Under the pieces are notes generated by a model. That model made no database searches, had not been told where the DNA came from, and was given only the letters and a program-made list of their open reading frames with translations. Shown piece after piece: positions 1,030-56,903 of a stretch of 64,000 bases of DNA (position 1 is the first letter of the stretch; every line of letters starts with the position of its first letter). The stretch spans positions 11,718,001 through 11,782,000 of the forward strand of contig OU015567.1 of assembly GCA_907165135.1 (NCBI GenBank), given 5' to 3'. Made by a program: the position numbers and the translations under genes. Source of the DNA: Oikopleura dioica (taxonomy: Eukaryota; Animalia; Chordata).

Positions 1030-4000
1030 ATGGCCTATCCCGGCATATGGGCGAATTCTTATGGCCAGATGTACCAAGGTAAAGCTATTAAATCGAACAT
1101 TTTTATCATATGCACTAATCTTGACGACAATTGTTTATGGCACATTTATAGAACATTTTTATGGGTCATTCATGATAATATCTCGATGGTGATTCTTCAT
1201 ACATTTAATTTAAGGATATAGCCGTTCTCAAGGCACTTTCGTAGCGCCGAAATGGGGCGATAAAATTTTTTCATTTCAAGACAGGTCCTACCTAAAATTA
1301 TGTCTAGAATTCGATTCTGATGTTTTTTAAAATTTTTTTCAAAGAAAATTTCTCTCTGGAGCGATTTGAAATCTTACGATCACTTTTTCTCGAAATTTTT
1401 CAATTAAATCGCTAAAACTAAACCGTGTTTTATTATAAATAACTGCTAATCTATCTTCCTAAGGCCTCAAAATTTCAAAACCCGAGCAAATTTTCATTCT
1501 AGCGTCCTCTTCTTTTTGGCTTTTCTTTTTCATAAATGCTGCGTTCAGGGCGCTGGGCCAATCAGCGCGCTCTTTCACATGCGCGCCTCACCGCGCGATG
1601 GAGGAGGGCGCCCAGCGCAGCAAACCAGAGCGCTGTCTGACGCTTCGGCTTACTCAAGTAAGCCTCATAAAAATGGCTCTAGAACCATAAATAATTTGAA
1701 TCTATTAAACTTTAAGCCCTAGGAATGTAGAGAAAGGTCCAAATTTTTAATTTATCAAAAAAACTCGACCGATTTAATGGAAAATTCTCGAGAAAAAGTG
1801 ATCGTAAGATTTAAAATTGCTCTAGAGAGAAATTTTTCCATTTAAAAATTAAAAAGAACACTAGAATCGGGTTTCTTAGGCAATTTTAGGTAGGGTTCCT
1901 TTTGAAATGAAAAAATTTTATCGTCCCCTTTTCGCGCTACGAAAGTGCCTTGAGAACGGCTATATCCTTAATAGAAAACAAAACCTTTTCCCCGTTAGAC
2001 TTCACGGGAAAGTCATGGCTAATTTAAATCTGAAACAAATTCCATTATGCGATTGTTGGTGTGAAAAAGGACTTTTACGCAGGAATTGGAGCATAAAAGA
2101 ACAATGATGAAGTGGTTCGTCGCATCAGATTAGATTTCACCTCAAGCAGGTCACACCGCGCCTCAAGATTTAGGCTAAACTGGCGGCACTAATTTGTTGC
2201 AGTTTTAATCCTGTTTCGAATTTTAATATTAAGGTGCACCTGGCAATAATAACAACTATGCCCAACCAGCTCAGTACCCCCCAAGCGCTCAAACTCCGGG
2301 TCAGCAGGCGCCGATCCAAGCTAATGGTCAACCTGAATACGGAGCTCAATATTACGCCGCCCAAGGACACTATCCAAACTATCACAATAACTATTACGTG
2401 AGCAGTACTCAGCCTGCATTGACGGCTACTTCCGGAAGTCAAGTAACGTACCAGTTGCAAGAGCCGCCCCAAGAAGCAATGGGAGAGATAAAATATACAA
2501 TCGATGATACAGACAGGTAAATAAGATTTTTCTTGGCGGATCCCAATATTTCATAGAAGGCGTGGCGGTAAGAAATCCAAGAAGCGGGAAGAAAACGGCG
2601 AGAACGAAATCGACCGTGTTTTCATCTGGGATCTGGACGAGACGATCATCATTTTCCACTCCCTTCTCACGTCTTCTTATGCCCAGCGCTACGGAAAGGT
2701 GACTTCCTCTCTTGGAGCTCATTTGGGCGTCGGGTTTCGACAAATTTCGAGTTTGAAATTCGCAATTATCCTCCCGGATAAGCCGCGACGCCATCTCGCG
2801 CAGAGCCCCAAGTGTTCGGTTTCACAAAGATCGCCAGATTAGACGCGAAAGTCCACGGCTTTCTTTAGCTAATGGATTATCATTTTTCTTGGAAAGAAAT
2901 GGCTCTTCAACTGTTTTTAAGGATACGAATGCAACATTGCAACTTGGGCTGAGGATGGAAGAGCTCATCTTCAATCTCGCAGACAACCATTTGTTCTTCA
3001 ACGATTTGGAAGAGTGCGACCAAGTCCACTGTGATGATGTCGCTGCTGATGATAATGGACAGGATCTCGCGAATTATAATTTCCAGACTGATGGTTTTCG
3101 GTAAATAGCTTTTCTTGCACCTTTTATTAAGGATATACCCGATAAAATTGAACTTTTCTAGCGCCGAAATGCTACGTAGGATCATTTTTATTTCAAAGGC
3201 AATTCTACCGTAAAATGCACGCAGATCTCAAATCTGGTACTTTTTTATATTTTCTCATTTGAATTTTTCTTTTTAGAGCAATTTCAAATCTTACTCTCTC
3301 GATTACTCGAAATTTTTGGTATAAATCGGTCGAGATTTTTCGATAGATAAGTTCTTTAGACCGTTTTCTACAATATTGATGGTTTACTTTTCCTTAATTC
3401 CGAAGGAAACTGATTCTAGAGTCATTTCATTAAGGGCTACCCAGCGCGTGAACGCTCTACAAAGCGGCGCGCTGGGTGCTCACTCAGTCGACTCCTCTTT
3501 TCCGAGAGAAAGTGAGTGGTTGAGCGCACCGCTCTGATTGGTAGCACGCGAAAAAGCGCGCAGAGAAGAAAAACAAGAGTATAAATGAGGAGAACACTAG
3601 AATGAAAATTCAATAGGGTTTAAGAATTTAATCCCATCAATTTCGTAGCTTAGCATTATTCTTATACAGAACACGGGTCATTTTTAGCGATGAAGTGAAA
3701 AAATTTCGAGAAATCGAGAGAGTTCGTTTTCAAATCGCTCTAGAGAGAAAAATTGTAATAAAAATTTTTAAATAAGTAGCAGAATTGAATTTAACGCACA
3801 ATTTTAGGTAGGATTTCTTTTGAAATAAAAATGATCCGACTTCGTATTTAGGCGCTATGAAAGTTTAATTTTATCGGGTATATCCTTAAATTCAATTTAG
3901 AACAGCAAATGCAGCAGGCGCTATCTGTCTCGGGCCGGGAGTTCGAGGAGGAGTGGACTGGATGAGAAAACTAGCTTTTAGATACCGAAGGATCAAAGAA

Positions 4001-4580
4001 CTCTACGACACCTTCAAGGACAATATTCCAGGTAATCCATTCGATAAATTTTTTGTAGGAATTTTTATTTTAGAGCTCCTCTCAAGTCCAGTTGGAGAAG
4101 CTTGGCGGCAGCTAAGAACGGAAATTGACCAGAGCACGGATAACTGGTGTGCCCTCGCGCTGAAAGCGCTTAGTGTCATTCATAATCGGTAAGAACTGAC
4201 TGCCTAAAGCTGCAAATAATTTGAGAATCCTAGACCTGGATGCGTAAATATAATGGTGACAACAACTCAGCTGGTCCCTGCGATAGCGAAGTGCATGCTG
4301 TACGAATTAGGGCCTGTTTTCAATATTGACAACGTCTACTCCGCAACGAAAATCGGAAAGGAGAGCTGCTTCGAAAGAATTATCCAGCGTTTTGGAAAGA
4401 ATGTCACGTACGTCTGTATTGGCGACGGGAGAGAAGAAGAGATTGCTGCAAAAACGGTACCGAAAAATGTTACTTTCATTTTTTAAAAATTGATTTCAGC
4501 ATAACGTTCCATTCTGGCCAATCTCGACGCACAATGACTTGATGGCTCTTCACCAAGCGTTAGAGCTTGAATATCTGTAA
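1030..4580 (+). CDS. EYA: Eyes absent (EYA) transcriptional co-activator / HAD phosphatase, multi-exon
   Basis: Exons read by eye give a P/Q/Y-rich N-terminus with [27 protein letters not shown] (catalytic DxD), [39 protein letters not shown] and the ending [13 protein letters not shown]. First exon at 1030-1078 is tentative. Confidence 0.95.
1214..1967. mobile_element. 754-bp non-autonomous MITE, TTAA-flanked, GG termini (Kolobok-like), in EYA intron 1
   Basis: TTAA at 1210-1213 and 1968-1971. 34-bp perfect terminal inverted repeat GGATATAGCCGTTCTCAAGGCACTTTCGTAGCGC extends imperfectly for over 200 bp. GC-rich core, no coding capacity. Confidence 0.85.
3131..3885. mobile_element. 755-bp MITE related to the 1214-1967 element, in an EYA intron
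   Basis: TTAA at 3127-3130 and 3886-3889. TIR GGATATACCCGATAAAATT(G/A)AACTTT. Shares GGATATA ends and subterminal blocks with 1214-1967. Host intron is 3101-3900. Confidence 0.85.
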
Positions 4581-51487: not shown

Positions 51488-52620
51488 TTAGTTATTTACA
51501 AAGATTTCATCCGTAACGTGCTTCGGCGCTTCTGGCAGGTTCTTCTTGTGCTCTTCCTTTGCTTCTCTTTCGATGACCTTGTTCATGTAACTCTTGCCCT
51601 TTTGGCCGTAGCCTTGGGCGCGTCTTCGCTCGTTCGGGCTCACATAATCTAGAACACAAATATTCACATCAATCACAAGAGCGAGGATAATAGCAACAAA
51701 TAAAAAAACAATATGCGTATTTTACCTGGATTGAGATAGATCGCTGGCCCCGAAAACGGTCCCTCCTGAATCCTTTGCAAGTTCAGCACCAGTCGCGGTC
51801 CGATTTCAACCGTCTCAGGCTCAAACTTCTGATCCTTGACCTTGTTCGTTCCTTCCAAGATGATCTGATAGTTTCTGATCCAGATTCTGTCGTCGAGGAT
51901 GGAGAAGTTGAGGACGTGGTCGATGAATGGCTGCGATTTGGGGTGATAGCGGGGAGTGCCGAAGACCTGAGTGAACATTTCTTTGATGAGGGCGTAGTGA
52001 GGTTCTTCGTCGAAGTGATGGTCGAAGACGAGCAGGGGGCGAGAGCCCTTTAATAGAAATACTTGGACGGTTGAAGTTTTTTTAATACCTTTAGGCAGTT
52101 TCCTGAAAATTTCAATTCACCCATCGTGTTCAACCCCTCGACATTGAATCGAATCGTCGGCCCTTCATCAACATCAGCCACTGTTATGTAGAGATCCTTC
52201 TTTTTACGCCCTTCAAAATACAGGATTTTCGAGCAGTTCTTCATTTCTGCGATTTCTTTTATGATCGCCTAAATTTTTTGAGATTCACTAGAAATTTATT
52301 GAAAGATGAGTTTTACCCGGTCGTTTTTCTTTTCGAGCTTGACATCGGCTTTGGAATGTGGCATAATGTTTCGAAGGTCTTGCATAAAATGACGAGTTCG
52401 GTAATCTAAGATCAATTGAAAACACTTGATTTCGATGATTTTTCCTACCAAGGCCTCTTGATCCAAAGATCAAGCATCTGGTCTTGTTCTTCCACTTTCC
52501 CTGCGACATGGTAGGCATGTCGTTGACCTCCAATATTTCGCCAAGTGTGGCGCTAATTTCCTCATTTTTCGCCTTCTTCGCGCTGTCAGCATCTGTCACT
52601 TTTTCGCCGTCTCTCTTCAT
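51488..52620 (-). CDS. BRIX1: Ribosome biogenesis protein BRX1 (Brix domain)
   Basis: KWKNKTRCLIFGSRG, RNIMPHSKADVK, YFEGRKKKDLY, TMGELKFSGNCLKGSRPLL, FGTPRYHPKSQPFIDHV, EIGPRLVLN. Confidence 0.93.
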
Positions 52621-52935
52621 CTCCTCTAATTCTGTTTATCTAAAGCGGTGTCTTGTTAGGCGCGTCTTATTAGTACTGTACGATTCTTTTCTATCTACAG
52701 TCGGGGAGTGGCGCAAAACAGCCAAGAAAAAGGAGCGGCGGGCGACCGAGCACCCTTTTTTGCGTGGGGAGAGATCGAACCAGTCCGACTGCGCCCAATC
52801 AATAGCACAAAATAAGACAGTCAATTGTCTGTCTCCTTGCAGCGCGTTTTTATCGTTTTTCGATAGCTAGATACGGACAGTAAGAACTTTTATACAGGCA
52901 GTGAATATTTCTAATTTCTAGGAACTTTGGTTTGT

Positions 52936-54033
52936 TCACATGTCTTTTGAAAACTCTTCCATGTAAATTTTGTACAGTTTCTTGTGCTCTTCTGCAGCTT
53001 TAACAGCTAGGAAAGAGTTAAAACAATATTCCAATTTGAATAATAAATGTACCCAGCTTATCTGCTTTTTCATTGCCGAGTTCTCCATTGTGGCCCTTGA
53101 CGTGTCTGAATTCAATGTCCACAAAGTTTCTCCGGATGTCGTCTATTTTCTGGAAGATTTCCTGGTGGATAATTGGGCTCTTGTCGTACTTAGTCCACTT
53201 TCCATCCTTCGCAAATCGCTTCCACTTGATTATCCAGACGTCCAGGGCGCTGATGCAGAATTTCGAGTCCGTCCGCACTTCGATTTTTTTGAACCCCTTT
53301 TCTTTCGCATGCCTTAACATTTCCATAATGTGTTTCGACAGTAATTTGCTCACTTGACAGCGGCGAGGATGGCCCTTGCCTCGCCAAAATTGTTCGTCGA
53401 GTATTCATTTTCAAAGCGGTCGTTCGGGATGGAATCCGCTTTCGCCGGGCCCCACCAAACACCTGACCCGCTGAAGCGTAGCCCCTTCTTGTTTTGATTG
53501 CCCGGGCAGGCGCCGTCTGTGTAAACCACATATGTTTCGCCGTCTTTTTTCAGCAAATATCCGTCTTCTGTCTCTTTAAGTGTGTTGTAGGGCTCATAAT
53601 CGGCATCTTTGTCACTCTTGCCTTCTGGATAATCAGACTTTTTATCATCGTTCTTCGATTTTTTGAACTGGTTAAAATTTGGTTTCGCATCTCCTTTTCT
53701 CTTCGAAGGACCATTTTTCCGTTGGGAAGTGCTAAGAATATCATTCTCCTTATCAACTCGTTCTTCTTTGACTGAATCTTCCGTTGATGTTCCACTTCCG
53801 AATTTCTTGACAAAGTCTGAAGCTGCCAATCGATCTGGAAACTTCTTAAATTTCGCGCCACTGAAGCCATTCACATTTGCTTGACATTCTGCCCATGTTA
53901 GATAAACTCCAGGATTTTTGCCTTTTGCGACTGCGTAAAATGGCATACTGAAGAGCCTTGATGCAGATTATCACGACTTGGTGCTACTTTACGTGTATGT
54001 GAAGATGTTACGACGAATAAATCTATTTAGCAT
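52936..54033 (-). CDS. RNASEH1: Ribonuclease H1 with upstream mitochondrial-targeting exon
   Basis: HBD MPFYAVAKGKNPGVYLTWAEC..FKKF; catalytic YTDGAC, TNNFGEARA, RTDSKF, HVKGHNGELGNEKADKLA. An in-frame upstream ATG at 54033 joins via a 45-nt intron (53948-53992). Confidence 0.93.
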
Positions 54034-54133
54034 ACATCCATTCAATCTTAAAACTAGAGTGAAAATATTTACTAAGAATTGTAGAAAGTGATGAACTATT
54101 GAAAATTGTGGCAGTAAAATGAGAAGATGCTTT

Positions 54134-54643
54134 TTAGAGAGATTTTTTCGGTTTTCTAGGAGTCAGGAAGAGGGATCTTTTCGCTGTTTTCTCCTCTTTA
54201 GATGCGGATTCGAGATTCTTCCTGAGAGTGGTGAGTTCTTTAGCGATTTTCGACTTTCGGTTTTCGAAAAACTTGATCTTGTTTTGGACAATAGTCTGTT
54301 CCGCCTCAAGTTTATGAATTGAAAGCTTGATTTCTTCGGCTTTGCTCAGAACCTTGCGCCGTTTGGTCAATCTTGGAGTTTCAGGTGTTCTTGAAATCGA
54401 CAAATCACGCGTTGAAACGCATCGTTTTCGCTTATCCGAGAGAACAGGAGTTGAGTTGTCCTGTTCTTTTCGAAGGTACTCGAGTGCGCCTTTGAGCGAC
54501 TTGAATTCTTCAAATCGCGCGCCTGGGTATCCATTAACTTGGGCGTACAGCTCGTCCCAGGTCTGAAAGAGTCCGGTTTTACGACCCACAGCGACTGCGT
54601 AAAACTCCTGCTGCACTGGTAAACTCATTCGCCGCCCGTCCAT
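54134..54643 (-). CDS. RNase H1 N-terminal hybrid-binding-domain (Cauli_VI)-only protein with basic NLS-like segments and a coiled coil
   Basis: FYAVAVGRKTGLFQTWDELYAQVNGYPGARFEEF matches the HBD. No RNase H catalytic motifs in the remaining ~110 aa. Single exon. Confidence 0.8.
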   Translation of the reverse strand: MDGRRMSLPVQQEFYAVAVGRKTGLFQTWDELYAQVNGYPGARFEEFKSLKGALEYLRKEQDNSTPVLSDKRKRCVSTRDLSISRTPETPRLTKRRKVLSKAEEIKLSIHKLEAEQTIVQNKIKFFENRKSKIAKELTTLRKNLESASKEEKTAKRSLFLTPRKPKKSL

Positions 54644-54922
54644 ATGGAATAGATAAAAGCAAGATTTCTATAAAAGATTTTCGTTTATTTTCTTTCTAGG
54701 ATTCATTTGAATCGAATTTCATATTTCATTGAATACAGAAAGAGTGTGAAAATAGCAAAAGAAGGCAACAGTATGTTCAGATATGATTCATATCATATGA
54801 TTATGAAATAAACAATCTCAGTCAGGGCGGGATTCAAACAGAGCACTTTTTGAACGTTATGAATTTTTACTTTCCGATTTAGAGCAACGACCCGTGTTAA
54901 GATGGCAAGCTTAAAGATATCA

Positions 54923-56118
54923 TCATAATTTAGTGGGTGGTTTATTATTGTTAGTAAGAGCTTTCTGCTTCACTCGTGTGTTCCATGCGAGTAGATCTTG
55001 TAGCGTGTTGAACCAGTCGTGATCCATGCGGGATACGGTAGGTAACGAATGCTGAGATTGTTGATTAAATTATTTATCGATGAAGAGATCGAGTTTACCT
55101 CTGAAGCCTTGATAATTAAATCTTGATTCTTCTGCAACTCTGGTCCAAGACGTCCATCGAAGCTAACAACGGCGTGTTTCCTCGCCTCAGGAACGACTTT
55201 AATTTTTATTACGGAAGTGGAAGGGACAACGATAGGCCTGAAAGACAACGAATGCGGACAAATAGGAGTGATGAGAATAGCCGGGACGGCTGGATGAACC
55301 ATTCCTGCGCCAGCCGAGAGCGAATACGCGGTTGAACCGGTTGGTGTCGCTATGATGATGCCATCAGCTTGAACTTGCGTGACCAAGTTGTCGTTGACAT
55401 ACAGCTCGAGATTGCTGAGGTAGTGATGAGAGCCGCGATCGACGACGATTTCGTTCAGAGCGGTGTTTGAAACATCGGGCGAGTCGGAGCCCGGAGTAAT
55501 GAGTTCGGCATGCAGTCTGGAGCGAAGAAGAACCTTTGATATACAGTGTTGGCAAATATTAATAGAAGCGTGTAGCGTCTAGGCAGTCTGTTTACCTTCA
55601 TGTTCCCTCCTATCACGTCATTTATGTGTTCTTTGAACTCAGTGAAGTCAAATGGGGTCAAGAACCCAAGCGATCCCAAGTTGAAAGACATCACGGGAGG
55701 AATACACGAGGGAAACAAGGAGGAAGCGTAAAGCAGGGTTCCATCGCCACCGAGGCAAACAACGAAATCGATCTTTTCCGAGATCTTTTCGAACCCCGTC
55801 ATGCCTTGAAAGACTTTCAATTCTGATTTGATCTCTTCGAACTTCTCAGAATGCTCTGACGATGAAATATCATCATCTGTTAATGTTTTTTCTTCCACAA
55901 AGACAAACATGTTCTTTTCTTTCAAGAGCTAAATCGGATAGTAAAAACAATTTCTAAAACAATTTTACCCATTCCGCAAGTTCAACGAAGGGTCCAACAG
56001 TATCGTAATGGAGCTTTCGAATAACCAAGACAGAATCAGGCGACACTTCCCATTCCATCCTGCCCTTCGAACTGATCTTTTCTCGATTATGAAAATTTTC
56101 AAGTCCAAGTGGAGGCAT
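54923..56118 (-). CDS. NADK: NAD kinase
   Basis: W..SPDSVLVIRK, VCLGGDGTLL, SFNLGSLGFL, ALNEIVVDRG, QADGIIIATPTGSTAYSLSAG, PICPHSLSFRP, SFDGR. Further upstream exons possible. Confidence 0.93.
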
Positions 56119-56903
56119 TTCAATTTATGGGTGGATGATAATAATGAGAACGCTCTTTTATGATGTGAAAAAAGGCACCTTGCTTCCTAGACAAACAACA
56201 AATAGTCTATTCAAGTGTAATGTAATATTACTAATGTTCCATTAATCAGAATCTTCTAGGCCGTCCATGAGAAACGTTTCATAGTCGAAGAAATTGAACA
56301 ATAGGGCGATTAAGTAGTGCAAAGAAAGCTAGCTCTAACCGAGACCTGAGGAGAACTCAGAGTAGGCATGATATTGACATGACGCCCATGCCGGGAGGGT
56401 CGCCTATGGGCAGTCCCAGTTGGCTTTTACAGGGTCAAGATATGAATCAACAACGGATGAGTTCACTTGACAATGTGGAGATGGTGGTCGGTTTTTCTTT
56501 TAAGAGTGCTCGAGTCACAGAATACAGGCGGGCTATTACTTCTCTCCAGTAAAAAGATTTTTATGAGCCCTTCTTAGGGCTTTTTGAAGCTATGAATTCT
56601 ATTCAAGTGTTTATTTTGTCTGCCGAAAATGTCTAGAGTCCTGTAAAATCAAAACCGACCAACACCCCTTCAGATTAATATTCATCCTTATTCAGTAATC
56701 ATTGACCCCTAATCAAAGGTAAATGCTCCATTACAAACCCAGCCCGGTCCGACCGATATCTATGCTGAAATTTATAACTAAAAATCATTTTCGTAATCGT
56801 AAATAAATAGAATCAGGCAGGGTTCTGGAAATCTCTCCAAAAAGGACATAAAATACAGTAGATGAAGATCTACAAATCACGTTGATCTACAGTGTGGTAA
56901 TCT

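What the first reader, a model, noticed from the sequence alone, without database searches (positions are those of the whole stretch)
54134..54643. Hybrid-binding-domain-only paralog directly upstream of RNASEH1, with charge-reversed binding residues
Seen: the HBD keeps FYAV..G..G.F.TW but has RFEEF where the neighbouring RNase H1 has KFKKF. There is no catalytic domain. The rest contains basic NLS-like stretches (KRKR, KRRK), several TP/TPRK CDK-type sites and a heptad coiled coil. Its stop is about 100 bp from the RNASEH1 start. Established: the Trp and the two Lys of FKKF in the human HBD mediate RNA/DNA hybrid binding. Inference: a tandem partial duplicate repurposed as a cell-cycle-regulated adaptor or decoy co-expressed with RNase H1, possibly an undescribed R-loop regulator.
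Basis: partly seen in the sequence, partly recalled or inferred. Interest (0 to 1): 0.7.

Follow-up and report, generated by a model that had tools for sequence, protein, structure and literature searches.

The report
Charge-reversed hybrid-binding-domain coiled-coil gene
Next to the RNase H1 gene, this small marine chordate genome (Oikopleura-type) has a real, strongly conserved 169-residue gene that pairs an RNase H1-type hybrid-binding domain, whose two DNA-gripping lysines have become glutamates, with a self-pairing coiled coil; its function is unknown.

Summary
[quoted passage not shown] It has no catalytic domain. It reads RFEEF where human K59/K60 lie and where the neighbouring RNase H1 has KFKKF. 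One correction: the stop is 187 nt from the RNase H1 ATG, not about 100.

It is a functional gene and not a repeat. The genome holds only five HBD units. Four sister-lineage orthologues (71-98% identity) keep the length, the stop, EE and the tail. dN/dS is 0.09-0.13, and its HBD changes more slowly than RNase H1's own HBD. A metatranscriptome contig covers its 3' half.

A net charge of -2 at positions 59/60 occurs only in this gene among 378 HBDs. The HBD-plus-tail architecture was found in one cluster among 1.84 billion representatives. The tail is predicted to form a homodimeric coiled coil (0.66 against a control of 0.01).

A sister lineage has four tandem HBD units at this locus, which supports origin by local duplication.

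Still untested: loss of canonical hybrid binding, a decoy or adaptor role, cell-cycle control and co-expression with RNase H1.

Earlier notes of this scan record two other HBD-derived genes elsewhere in this genome.

The parts
54134..54643 (-). Complete single-exon CDS of the HBD plus coiled-coil protein ('HBD-CC', 169 aa, stop codon at 54134-54136)
   Evidence: ORF list. Orthologues have the same start, stop and length. dN/dS is 0.09-0.13. Metatranscriptome contig at 54098-54430.
54476..54604 (-). Hybrid-binding-domain fold, residues 14-56
   Evidence: Pfam PF01693 at E 4.7e-16. PDB 3BSU at E 2e-9. AF2 model pLDDT 83. Foldseek against 3BSU gives TM 0.80/0.91 and rmsd 0.7 A.
54506..54511 (-). 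Codons of E45 and E46, at the positions of human K59 and K60
   Evidence: Alignment. Invariant in 5 sequences, with GAA/GAG synonymous variation at E46. It is the only -2 case among 378 HBDs.
54353..54433 (-). Low-complexity linker with two conserved basic clusters (KRKR 71-74, KRRK 94-97), RKRxxS and a conserved TP (86-87). These look like nuclear localisation signals and phosphosites.
   Evidence: Invariant columns in alignment A1. AF2 pLDDT is below 50 over residues 65-90. The linker dN/dS of 0.1-0.36 is higher than in the two domains.
54182..54343 (-). Long alpha-helix and heptad coiled coil, residues 101-154
   Evidence: AF2 helix 101-154 with pLDDT about 90. Predicted homodimer: ipSAE 0.66 against a best control of 0.01, with contacts at a/d positions 105-147 in antiparallel register.
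54137..54181 (-). Conserved C-terminal tail (K/R)SLFLTPRKxKKS(L/V): an RxL-like motif next to a full S/T-P-x-K site
   Evidence: The amino acids are invariant although nearly every codon differs synonymously between lineages.
54668..54689 (-). Invariant AATAAA followed by a TTTTATAG acceptor-like site, 24 nt upstream of the ATG. This is a candidate poly(A) signal for the upstream NAD kinase gene plus a trans-splice acceptor for HBD-CC.
   Evidence: Alignment of five upstream regions. Coordinates checked. The function is inferred, not shown.
53350..53946 (-). Exon 1 of the neighbouring bona fide RNase H1: HBD with KFKKF, linker and the start of the catalytic domain. The catalytic domain continues in ORF 53018-53353.
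   Evidence: Pfam Cauli_VI at E 5.9e-20, and RNase_H in two pieces. Metatranscriptome contig at 53674-53982. The orthologue in L027 starts at 4101.
54923..56118 (-). Upstream co-oriented NAD kinase gene, with its stop at 54923-54925
   Evidence: Pfam NAD_kinase and NAD_kinase_C. Spliced contigs and reads. The same order is seen in L011, L027 and L028.

Best explanation
HBD-CC is a real protein-coding gene under selection, found so far only in Oikopleura-type lineages. It belongs to a tandem array of HBD-encoding units that sits next to RNase H1. The protein has four parts. First, an intact RNase H1-type HBD fold that keeps the aromatic residues (Y/F15, W29, F44) and the GARF loop but has two glutamates where the canonical domain clamps DNA phosphates with two lysines. 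Second, a disordered basic linker that resembles a nuclear localisation signal. Third, a coiled coil of about 50 residues that is predicted to pair two chains. Fourth, an invariant SLFLTPRK tail. My reading of the mechanism is inference: it is a nuclear, dimeric scaffold whose HBD face no longer binds RNA/DNA hybrids in the canonical way and has been retuned for another ligand, most likely a protein. HBDs are known protein-docking sites, for example for P32. The coiled-coil surface and the tail recruit or regulate partners. Shown here: the gene's reality, selective constraint, fold, the uniqueness of the charge reversal, the uniqueness of the architecture and the tandem array. Inferred: loss of hybrid binding, nuclear location, dimerisation in vivo, and any link to RNase H1 or R-loops.
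For: Domain and fold. E45/E46 fall on K59/K60, and KK59/60AA compromises hybrid binding in the RHINO sensor, citing Nowotny 2008 (PMC10639055). Among 378 HBDs from the 153 best profile hits, 324 carry a net positive charge at these two positions, and -2 occurs only in the four HBD-CC orthologues, even though the query profile favours EE. EE, L32 and Y33 are invariant in HBD-CC and absent or nearly absent in 61 other HBDs. Purifying selection: omega is 0.09-0.13 overall, 0.04-0.13 in the HBD and 0.04-0.12 in the coil and tail. Between the same two lineages, the HBD-CC HBD has dN 0.14 against 0.25 for the RNase H1 HBD. The genome has only five HBD units, so this is not a repeat. Only one full-length cluster appears among 1.84e9 representatives, and the tail profile hits nothing else. 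Synteny NADK - HBD-CC - HBD unit(s) - RNase H1 holds in the sister lineages. An RNA-library contig covers codons 72-169, and the same library contains spliced NADK contigs from this lineage. Helix 101-154 has pLDDT about 90. The homodimer scores 0.66 against a best control of 0.01, with partner pLDDT at least 86 and 100% contact agreement between runs. That mark was reached by 17 of 29 eukaryotic proteins solved as homodimers and 0 of 30 solved as single chains. Many non-core coil positions are invariant, which suggests a partner-binding surface. P32 binds human RNase H1 through its HBD (PMC3750045).
Against: No binding measurement exists. W29, F44 and the RNA-contacting loop are kept, which would be odd if the nucleic-acid face were simply abandoned. 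The basic linker clusters could supply phosphate contacts. The overall HBD charge (0 to +1) is not unusual, since 29% of other HBDs are at or below 0. Transcription rests on one low-depth contig of an intronless gene, so DNA carry-over cannot be excluded for that contig. The three raw RNA-seq runs came from a diverged lineage and did not lie on the gene. The dimer is a model; amphipathic helices pair easily in silico, and the antiparallel register is model-only. The NLS, CDK and RxL motifs are short patterns.
Confidence: 0.5

Rival explanations
1. HBD-CC still binds RNA/DNA hybrids or dsRNA. The aromatic platform and RNA-contacting loop do the recognition, the basic linker clusters replace the lost lysines, and dimerisation gives a bivalent reader or protector of hybrids. 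The EE pair only lowers affinity or shifts specificity.
For: Y/F15, W29, F44, R43 and the GARF loop are invariant. KRKR and KRRK are conserved next to the domain. A dimer is predicted. Other HBDs tolerate KS, KG or QK at 59/60.
Against: Even neutral alanines at 59/60 give a non-binding sensor (PMC10639055), and here the charge is reversed. No other HBD of 374 has -2 at these positions. Strict conservation of EE, with synonymous codon change, argues that the acidic pair itself is selected.
Confidence: 0.3
2. This is the first reader's version: a decoy or adaptor that acts directly on RNase H1. It could pair its acidic HBD face with the basic face of the RNase H1 HBD, or compete for RNase H1's HBD-binding partners. 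It would be co-transcribed with RNase H1 in an operon and gated by CDK phosphorylation.
For: It is adjacent and co-oriented with RNase H1 in every lineage seen. Charge complementarity: EE against KK. A conserved AATAAA plus acceptor-like site lies before HBD-CC, and a CTCTTCAG acceptor-like site lies directly before the RNase H1 ATG in two lineages. TPRK and RSLF are invariant. O. dioica resolves operons with a single spliced leader (PMC7986045).
Against: No interaction test was run. The CDS-to-CDS gaps (279 and 187 nt) exceed the 60-bp criterion used for O. dioica operons unless the UTRs fill them. No contig bridges the two genes. In sister lineages two further genes lie between them. HBD-HBD pairing has no precedent that I could verify.
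Confidence: 0.12
3. It is not a functional gene but a decaying partial duplicate, a retroelement fragment or an annotation artefact.
For: It is intronless, short and next to its presumed source gene. RNA evidence is thin.
Against: dN/dS is about 0.1 across lineages whose synonymous sites are near saturation. Start, stop and length are identical. It is single-copy in the genome. Its HBD is more conserved than that of RNase H1 itself.
Confidence: 0.02

Closest known systems
Hybrid-binding domain of eukaryotic RNase H1 (human 3BSU, yeast 1QHK; Pfam PF01693 Cauli_VI)
   Same: It has the same fold, 50% identity to the human domain without gaps, and the same aromatic residues (Y29, W43, F58 equivalents) and loop.
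   Different: It is not attached to an RNase H catalytic domain. K59/K60 are replaced by E/E, and the conserved Cys after W-x-E is replaced by Leu-Tyr.
Engineered HBD-only R-loop sensors (GFP-HB, RHINO) and their KK59/60AA non-binding controls
   Same: It is an HBD without nuclease, made multivalent: the sensors use tandem copies, and here dimerisation is predicted.
   Different: At the two lysine positions the natural protein resembles the non-binding control, not the sensor, and goes further by reversing the charge.
HBD-only micro-ORFs and other HBD genes of the same organism group
   Same: These are small intronless genes encoding one HBD, in the same tandem array: ORF A (64 aa) and ORF B (68 aa) in L027. 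ORF A has omega 0.06-0.12. Two further HBD ORFs lie on contig 2 of this genome.
   Different: Those keep K at position 59 (KGF or KKF) and lack the linker, coiled coil and tail. ORFs A and B are absent from this window's lineage.
Caulimovirus P6 (viroplasmin), after which the Pfam family is named
   Same: It shares the Cauli_VI domain placed in a non-nuclease protein. JGI's automatic name for the orthologues uses this label.
   Different: There is no other similarity. The viral protein is large and multifunctional. The comparison rests on the Pfam family definition only and was not tested here.

Membership tests
RNase H1 N-terminal hybrid-binding domain (PF01693) | Sequence match above the curated threshold | tested here: met
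   59.2 bits against a cut-off of 21, E 4.7e-16, profile positions 2-44 of 44.
RNase H1 N-terminal hybrid-binding domain (PF01693) | Beta-beta-alpha-beta-alpha fold superposable on a solved HBD | tested here: met
   AF2 with a 65-sequence alignment gives pLDDT 83. Foldseek against 3BSU_A gives TM 0.80/0.91 and rmsd 0.7 A over 46 residues.
RNase H1 N-terminal hybrid-binding domain (PF01693) | Aromatic residues of the DNA-contact face (human Y29, W43, F58) | tested here: met
   Y15 (F in sister lineages), W29 and F44 are invariant.
RNase H1 N-terminal hybrid-binding domain (PF01693) | Basic pair at human K59/K60 needed for hybrid binding | tested here: not met
   E45/E46. A net charge of -2 occurs only in this gene among 378 HBDs. 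KK59/60AA compromises binding (PMC10639055).
RNase H1 N-terminal hybrid-binding domain (PF01693) | Measured preference for RNA/DNA hybrid over dsRNA and dsDNA | not testable with these tools
   Needs EMSA or anisotropy. The human reference values are 0.2, 4.9 and 23 uM, as cited in PMC5737507.
RNase H1 enzyme (type 1 RNase H) | RNase H catalytic domain with the acidic active-site residues | tested here: not met
   There is no PF00075 match in the 169 aa, and the ORF ends at a conserved stop. The neighbouring gene has the catalytic domain.
Oikopleura operon member (SL trans-spliced polycistron) | Co-oriented genes with an intercistronic distance of at most about 60 bp between transcript ends | tested here: inconclusive
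   The genes are co-oriented. The CDS-to-CDS gaps are 279 and 187 nt. A conserved AATAAA lies 8 nt before an acceptor-like TTTTATAG. The criterion comes from PMC7986045.
Oikopleura operon member (SL trans-spliced polycistron) | Spliced leader on the mRNA 5' end | not tested
CDK substrate / cell-cycle-regulated protein | S/T-P-x-K/R site(s), a cyclin-docking RxL, and periodic expression or phosphorylation | tested here: inconclusive
   T161-P-R-K and (K/R)-S-L-F are invariant, and T86-P is invariant. Expression and phosphorylation are not testable here.
Homodimeric coiled coil | Continuous heptad register and a self-association interface | tested here: met
   The a/d positions are 105, 109, 112, 116, 119, 123, 126, 130, 133, 137, 140, 144 and 147. 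ipSAE is 0.66 against a best control of 0.01. The helix has pLDDT about 90. This is a model only.

The most novel reading that the evidence does not exclude
HBD-CC is a natural 'hybrid-blind' HBD: a dimeric nuclear regulator that uses an acidic, DNA-mimicking version of the hybrid-binding face to engage RNase H1's own HBD or its HBD-docking partners. It would thereby gate R-loop removal, possibly under CDK control. That would make it a new class of RNase H1 antagonist or adaptor, born by partial tandem duplication.
Probability: 0.1. Interest if true: 0.75.

Novelty: new variant of a known kind. Interest (0 to 1): 0.45.

Why it matters
The HBD is the standard module for recognising RNA/DNA hybrids, and it is the basis of R-loop sensors. 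Here evolution has kept the fold and the aromatic platform under strong constraint while fixing a charge reversal at the two lysines that experimenters mutate to kill binding. It has also fused the domain to a dimerising helix. The protein therefore offers a direct test of what else an HBD surface can do, whether protein docking, altered nucleic-acid specificity or regulation of RNase H1. The locus also shows an evolutionary process in progress. Partial duplicates of the RNase H1 5' end persist as independent small genes, and their number differs between closely related plankton lineages.

Tried and rejected
1) Retroelement or repeat origin is rejected. The genome has only five HBD units, and the full protein matches only itself.

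2) Neutral evolution is rejected.

3) I searched for the tail in other proteins three ways: a word search on residues 62-169, an HMM of the tail against the 153 best hits and an ESM Atlas search of residues 92-169. All found only the orthologues or nothing. Weak Pfam coiled-coil hits (ACBP4_C, TMF_TATA_bd) are far below their cut-offs.

4) The first AF2 run, on a 5-sequence alignment, mis-modelled the HBD as helices. I discarded it for the HBD and kept it only for helix 101-154.

5) Raw RNA-seq runs X8-X10 are labelled as the same species, but they are 90-95% alike, lie only on conserved NAD kinase exons and give no information on HBD-CC.

6) From L014 I first thought that the 64-aa ORF was an upstream exon of a two-HBD RNase H1. 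The longer contig L027 shows separate ORFs, each with its own ATG and stop, before an RNase H1 that starts with its own ATG. I dropped the idea.

7) I tried to decide the donor of the duplication by HBD identity. It is not resolvable: 41% to the neighbour, 47% to a contig-2 HBD and 50% to human.

8) I looked for the RPA-HBD literature (R57A) and Nowotny 2008.

9) RNase H1 was searched exon by exon only.

Full report
WHAT IS THERE

On the minus strand, 54134-54643 is an uninterrupted ORF of 169 codons. Pfam places an RNase H1 N-terminal domain (Cauli_VI, the hybrid-binding domain or HBD) at residues 14-56. The match scores E 4.7e-16 and 59.2 bits against a cut-off of 21, and there is no RNase H catalytic domain.

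The next gene downstream on the same strand is a bona fide RNase H1. Its exon 1 starts at 53946 and holds an HBD (E 5.9e-20) and the start of the catalytic domain. The catalytic domain continues in ORF 53018-53353. I searched its exons separately and built no joined model.

The two HBDs are 36% identical. The gap from the HBD-CC stop to the RNase H1 ATG is 187 nt, not about 100. Upstream, co-oriented, lies an NAD kinase gene.

The window is contig 5:11718001-11782000 of a 64.3-Mb, 19-contig genome. From memory, that size and contig count fit an Oikopleura dioica assembly, and earlier notes of this scan call it Oikopleura.

THE CHARGE REVERSAL

phmmer against the PDB aligns residues 13-60 without gaps to the human HBD in 3BSU (E 2e-9). 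The correspondences are:
- Y15 = Y29
- W29 = W43
- R43 = R57
- F44 = F58
- E45/E46 = K59/K60

W43A and KK59/60AA are the substitutions used to make non-binding controls of HBD-based R-loop sensors. [quoted passage not shown] 2008).

With a 65-sequence alignment, AlphaFold gives a beta-beta-alpha-beta-alpha domain at pLDDT 83. It superposes on 3BSU at TM 0.80/0.91 and rmsd 0.7 A. The fold is therefore intact.

I extracted 378 HBDs from the 153 proteins that best match a profile of this gene. At positions 59/60 the net charge was:

| Net charge | HBDs |
|---|---|
| +2 | 174 |
| +1 | 150 |
| 0 | 42 |
| -1 | 8 |
| -2 | 4 (the four orthologues of this gene only) |

This holds even though the profile itself rewards EE. 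Compared with 61 other HBDs, the positions that are invariant here and absent or nearly absent elsewhere are L32 (Cys in 42 of 61), Y33, E45 and E46. The overall domain charge (0 to +1) is not exceptional.

IT IS A REAL, CONSTRAINED GENE

The genome has only five HBD units: this one, RNase H1, and three on contig 2. A repeat or retroelement origin is therefore excluded.

The word-indexed protein search found four orthologue clusters at 98, 72, 71 and 71% identity, all 166-173 aa, from Tara and other marine metagenomes and one Logan run. All keep the start, the stop, RFEEF, both basic clusters, the helix and the tail.

Nei-Gojobori dN/dS:

| Region | dN/dS |
|---|---|
| Whole protein | 0.09-0.13 |
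| HBD | 0.04-0.13 |
| Coil plus tail | 0.04-0.12 |
| Linker | 0.1-0.36 |

Synonymous sites between the window lineage and the others are near saturation. The E46 codon alternates between GAA and GAG. Nearly every codon of SLFLTPRK differs synonymously between lineages while the peptide is invariant.

Between the window and the L027 lineage, the HBD-CC HBD is 79% identical with dN 0.14. The HBD of RNase H1 itself is 64% identical with dN 0.25. The paralogue is thus the more constrained of the two.

TRANSCRIPTION

A marine metatranscriptome (X1) holds a 333-nt contig at 54098-54430 with 8 differences. It covers codons 72-169 and 36 nt of 3' UTR. A 309-nt contig covers RNase H1 exon 1. In the same library the NAD kinase contigs are spliced (55051>55099 and 55928>55969, with GT..AG on the minus strand), so RNA of this lineage is present.

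This is modest support. The gene has no intron, so DNA carry-over cannot be excluded for that contig. The three raw-read runs labelled with the species name are only 90-95% alike and lie only on NAD kinase.

ARCHITECTURE AND ITS RANGE

A full HMMER scan of 1.84 billion cluster representatives with the orthologue profile gave 3193 hits. Only one is full length, and it is the gene's own cluster. All others match profile positions of about 10-65 only. A tail-only profile hits nothing else among the best 153, and neither do the word search on residues 62-169 or the Atlas search. The next-best single HBD scores 63 bits against 125-128 for the orthologues.

The window protein is present, unnamed, in NCBI and UniRef. 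JGI's automatic name for the orthologues is 'viroplasmin and RNaseH domain-containing protein'. No held paper mentions both Oikopleura and RNase H1. Unannotated appendicularian genomes may not be in these protein libraries, so 'restricted to these lineages' is a lower bound on its range.

THE REST OF THE PROTEIN

- Residues 65-90 are predicted disordered. They carry invariant R72-K73-R74, S77, T86-P87 and K94-R95-R96.
- Residues 101-154 form one helix at pLDDT about 90, with an unbroken a/d register from I105 to A147.
- Two copies of residues 95-160 are predicted to pair. ipSAE is 0.66 against a best control of 0.01, partner pLDDT is at least 86, and contacts agree 100% between runs. The mark was reached by 17 of 29 eukaryotic proteins solved as homodimers and by 0 of 30 solved as single chains.
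- The listed contacts (105 with 140/144, 109 with 137/140, 123 with 123, 126 with 126) imply an antiparallel dimer. That is a model feature only.
- Many solvent-facing coil positions are invariant, more than a bare zipper needs. This suggests a partner surface.
- The tail (K/R)SLFLTPRK combines an RxL-like motif and a full S/T-P-x-K site. This is pattern-level evidence only.

ORIGIN AND NEIGHBOURHOOD

A 4.7-kb sister-lineage contig (L027) reads, in order: NAD kinase, HBD-CC, a 64-aa HBD-only ORF (A, 3287-3481), a 68-aa HBD-only ORF (B, 3663-3869), then RNase H1 with its own ATG at 4101. That is four tandem HBD units, against two in this window.

ORF A is conserved in three lineages with omega 0.06-0.12. 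In L014 the ORF B start codon reads ATA. The 3' flanks of ORFs A and B share an ACTGCC(T/A)TTTATCTTCAA motif, and a weaker CACTGCC lies after HBD-CC. This fits duplication of whole units.

The best match of ORF A in this genome is the RNase H1 HBD itself, at 46%. ORFs A and B are therefore missing here.

Sequence identity cannot say which unit gave rise to HBD-CC.

OPERON QUESTION

Twenty-four nt before the HBD-CC ATG, an AATAAA (54684-54689) followed by TTTTATAG (54668-54675) is invariant in all five sequences, while the surrounding DNA has diverged. CTCTTCAG sits directly before the RNase H1 ATG in two lineages.

This is the layout expected at junctions of O. dioica operons. Those operons use one spliced leader and are defined by intercistronic distances of at most 60 bp (PMC7986045). 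No read with a leader and no bridging contig was obtained, so co-transcription remains an inference.

HOW IT MOST LIKELY WORKS

Shown: an intact HBD fold under strong constraint, a fixed acidic pair where the canonical domain needs a basic pair, a constrained helix that is predicted to self-associate, and a constrained tail.

Inferred: the protein is nuclear and dimeric. Its HBD face no longer clamps the DNA strand of a hybrid but serves another ligand, most plausibly a protein. HBDs are known docking sites; P32 binds human RNase H1 through it (PMC3750045).

I give this reading about 0.5. The main rival (0.3) is that it remains a bivalent hybrid or dsRNA binder helped by its basic linker. A dead gene is excluded (0.02).

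VERDICT

- The gene is a new variant of a known kind: an HBD protein with a novel architecture and a unique charge reversal.
- Its interest is moderate and its function is unknown.
- Earlier notes of this scan record two other HBD-derived genes in the same genome: an HBD microprotein next to OGG1 and a catalytically disarmed RNase H1-like gene. I did not test these. They fit a picture of repeated re-use of this domain in this lineage.

Noticed in passing
L027:3287-3481 and L027:3663-3869 (sister lineage; also L010, L011, L014, L021, L022): Two extra HBD-only micro-ORFs (64 and 68 aa, both with KGF at positions 59-61) lie between HBD-CC and RNase H1, giving four tandem HBD units. ORF A has dN/dS 0.06-0.12 across three lineages. 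In L014 the ORF B start codon reads ATA. Both are absent from this window's 187-nt spacer.
   Followed up: partly
window 54813-54836 (-): A 24-nt block, TGAATCC(C)GCCCTGACTGAGATTG, lies between the NAD kinase stop and HBD-CC. Its 14-nt core is invariant in five sequences whose synonymous sites are near saturation. It may be a 3' UTR element or a promoter element; its function is unknown.
   Followed up: no
window 54668-54689 (-) and 53947-53954 (-): An invariant AATAAA plus TTTTATAG lies before the HBD-CC ATG, and a CTCTTCAG lies directly before the RNase H1 ATG. These are operon-junction-like signals suggesting an NADK - HBD-CC - RNase H1 polycistron. No spliced-leader reads were available.
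   Followed up: partly
L003:1486-1902 (G000 contig 2, about 948.7 kb) and L005:1441-1833 (contig 2, about 8.651 Mb): There are two more HBD genes in this genome. One is a 138-aa ORF with two HBDs, in which the Trp is replaced in both copies. The other is a 130-aa ORF with one divergent HBD (FFKGF). They are probably the genes described in earlier notes s1-378114 and s1-350393, but I did not establish which is which.
   Followed up: partly
L027:3540-3570 and 3935-3960; window 54100-54115 (-): The motif ACTGCC(T/A)TTTATCTTCAA is shared in the 3' flanks of micro-ORFs A and B, and a shorter CACTGCC follows HBD-CC. It is either a trace of duplication of whole units or a common 3' UTR signal.
   Followed up: no
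Read-laying runs X8-X10 on window 52500-56500: RNA-seq runs filed under the same species label are only 90-95% identical to this genome and lie only on conserved exons. The label covers deeply diverged cryptic lineages, so expression checks for this genome need same-lineage data.
   Followed up: no
proteins P0005-P0008, P0010 (database hits): Proteins of unknown origin carry 4-8 tandem HBDs separated by very acidic linkers; a few repeats have RMDTF or RMEQF in place of the KKF motif. They are natural multi-HBD arrays reminiscent of engineered tandem-HBD sensors.
   Followed up: no
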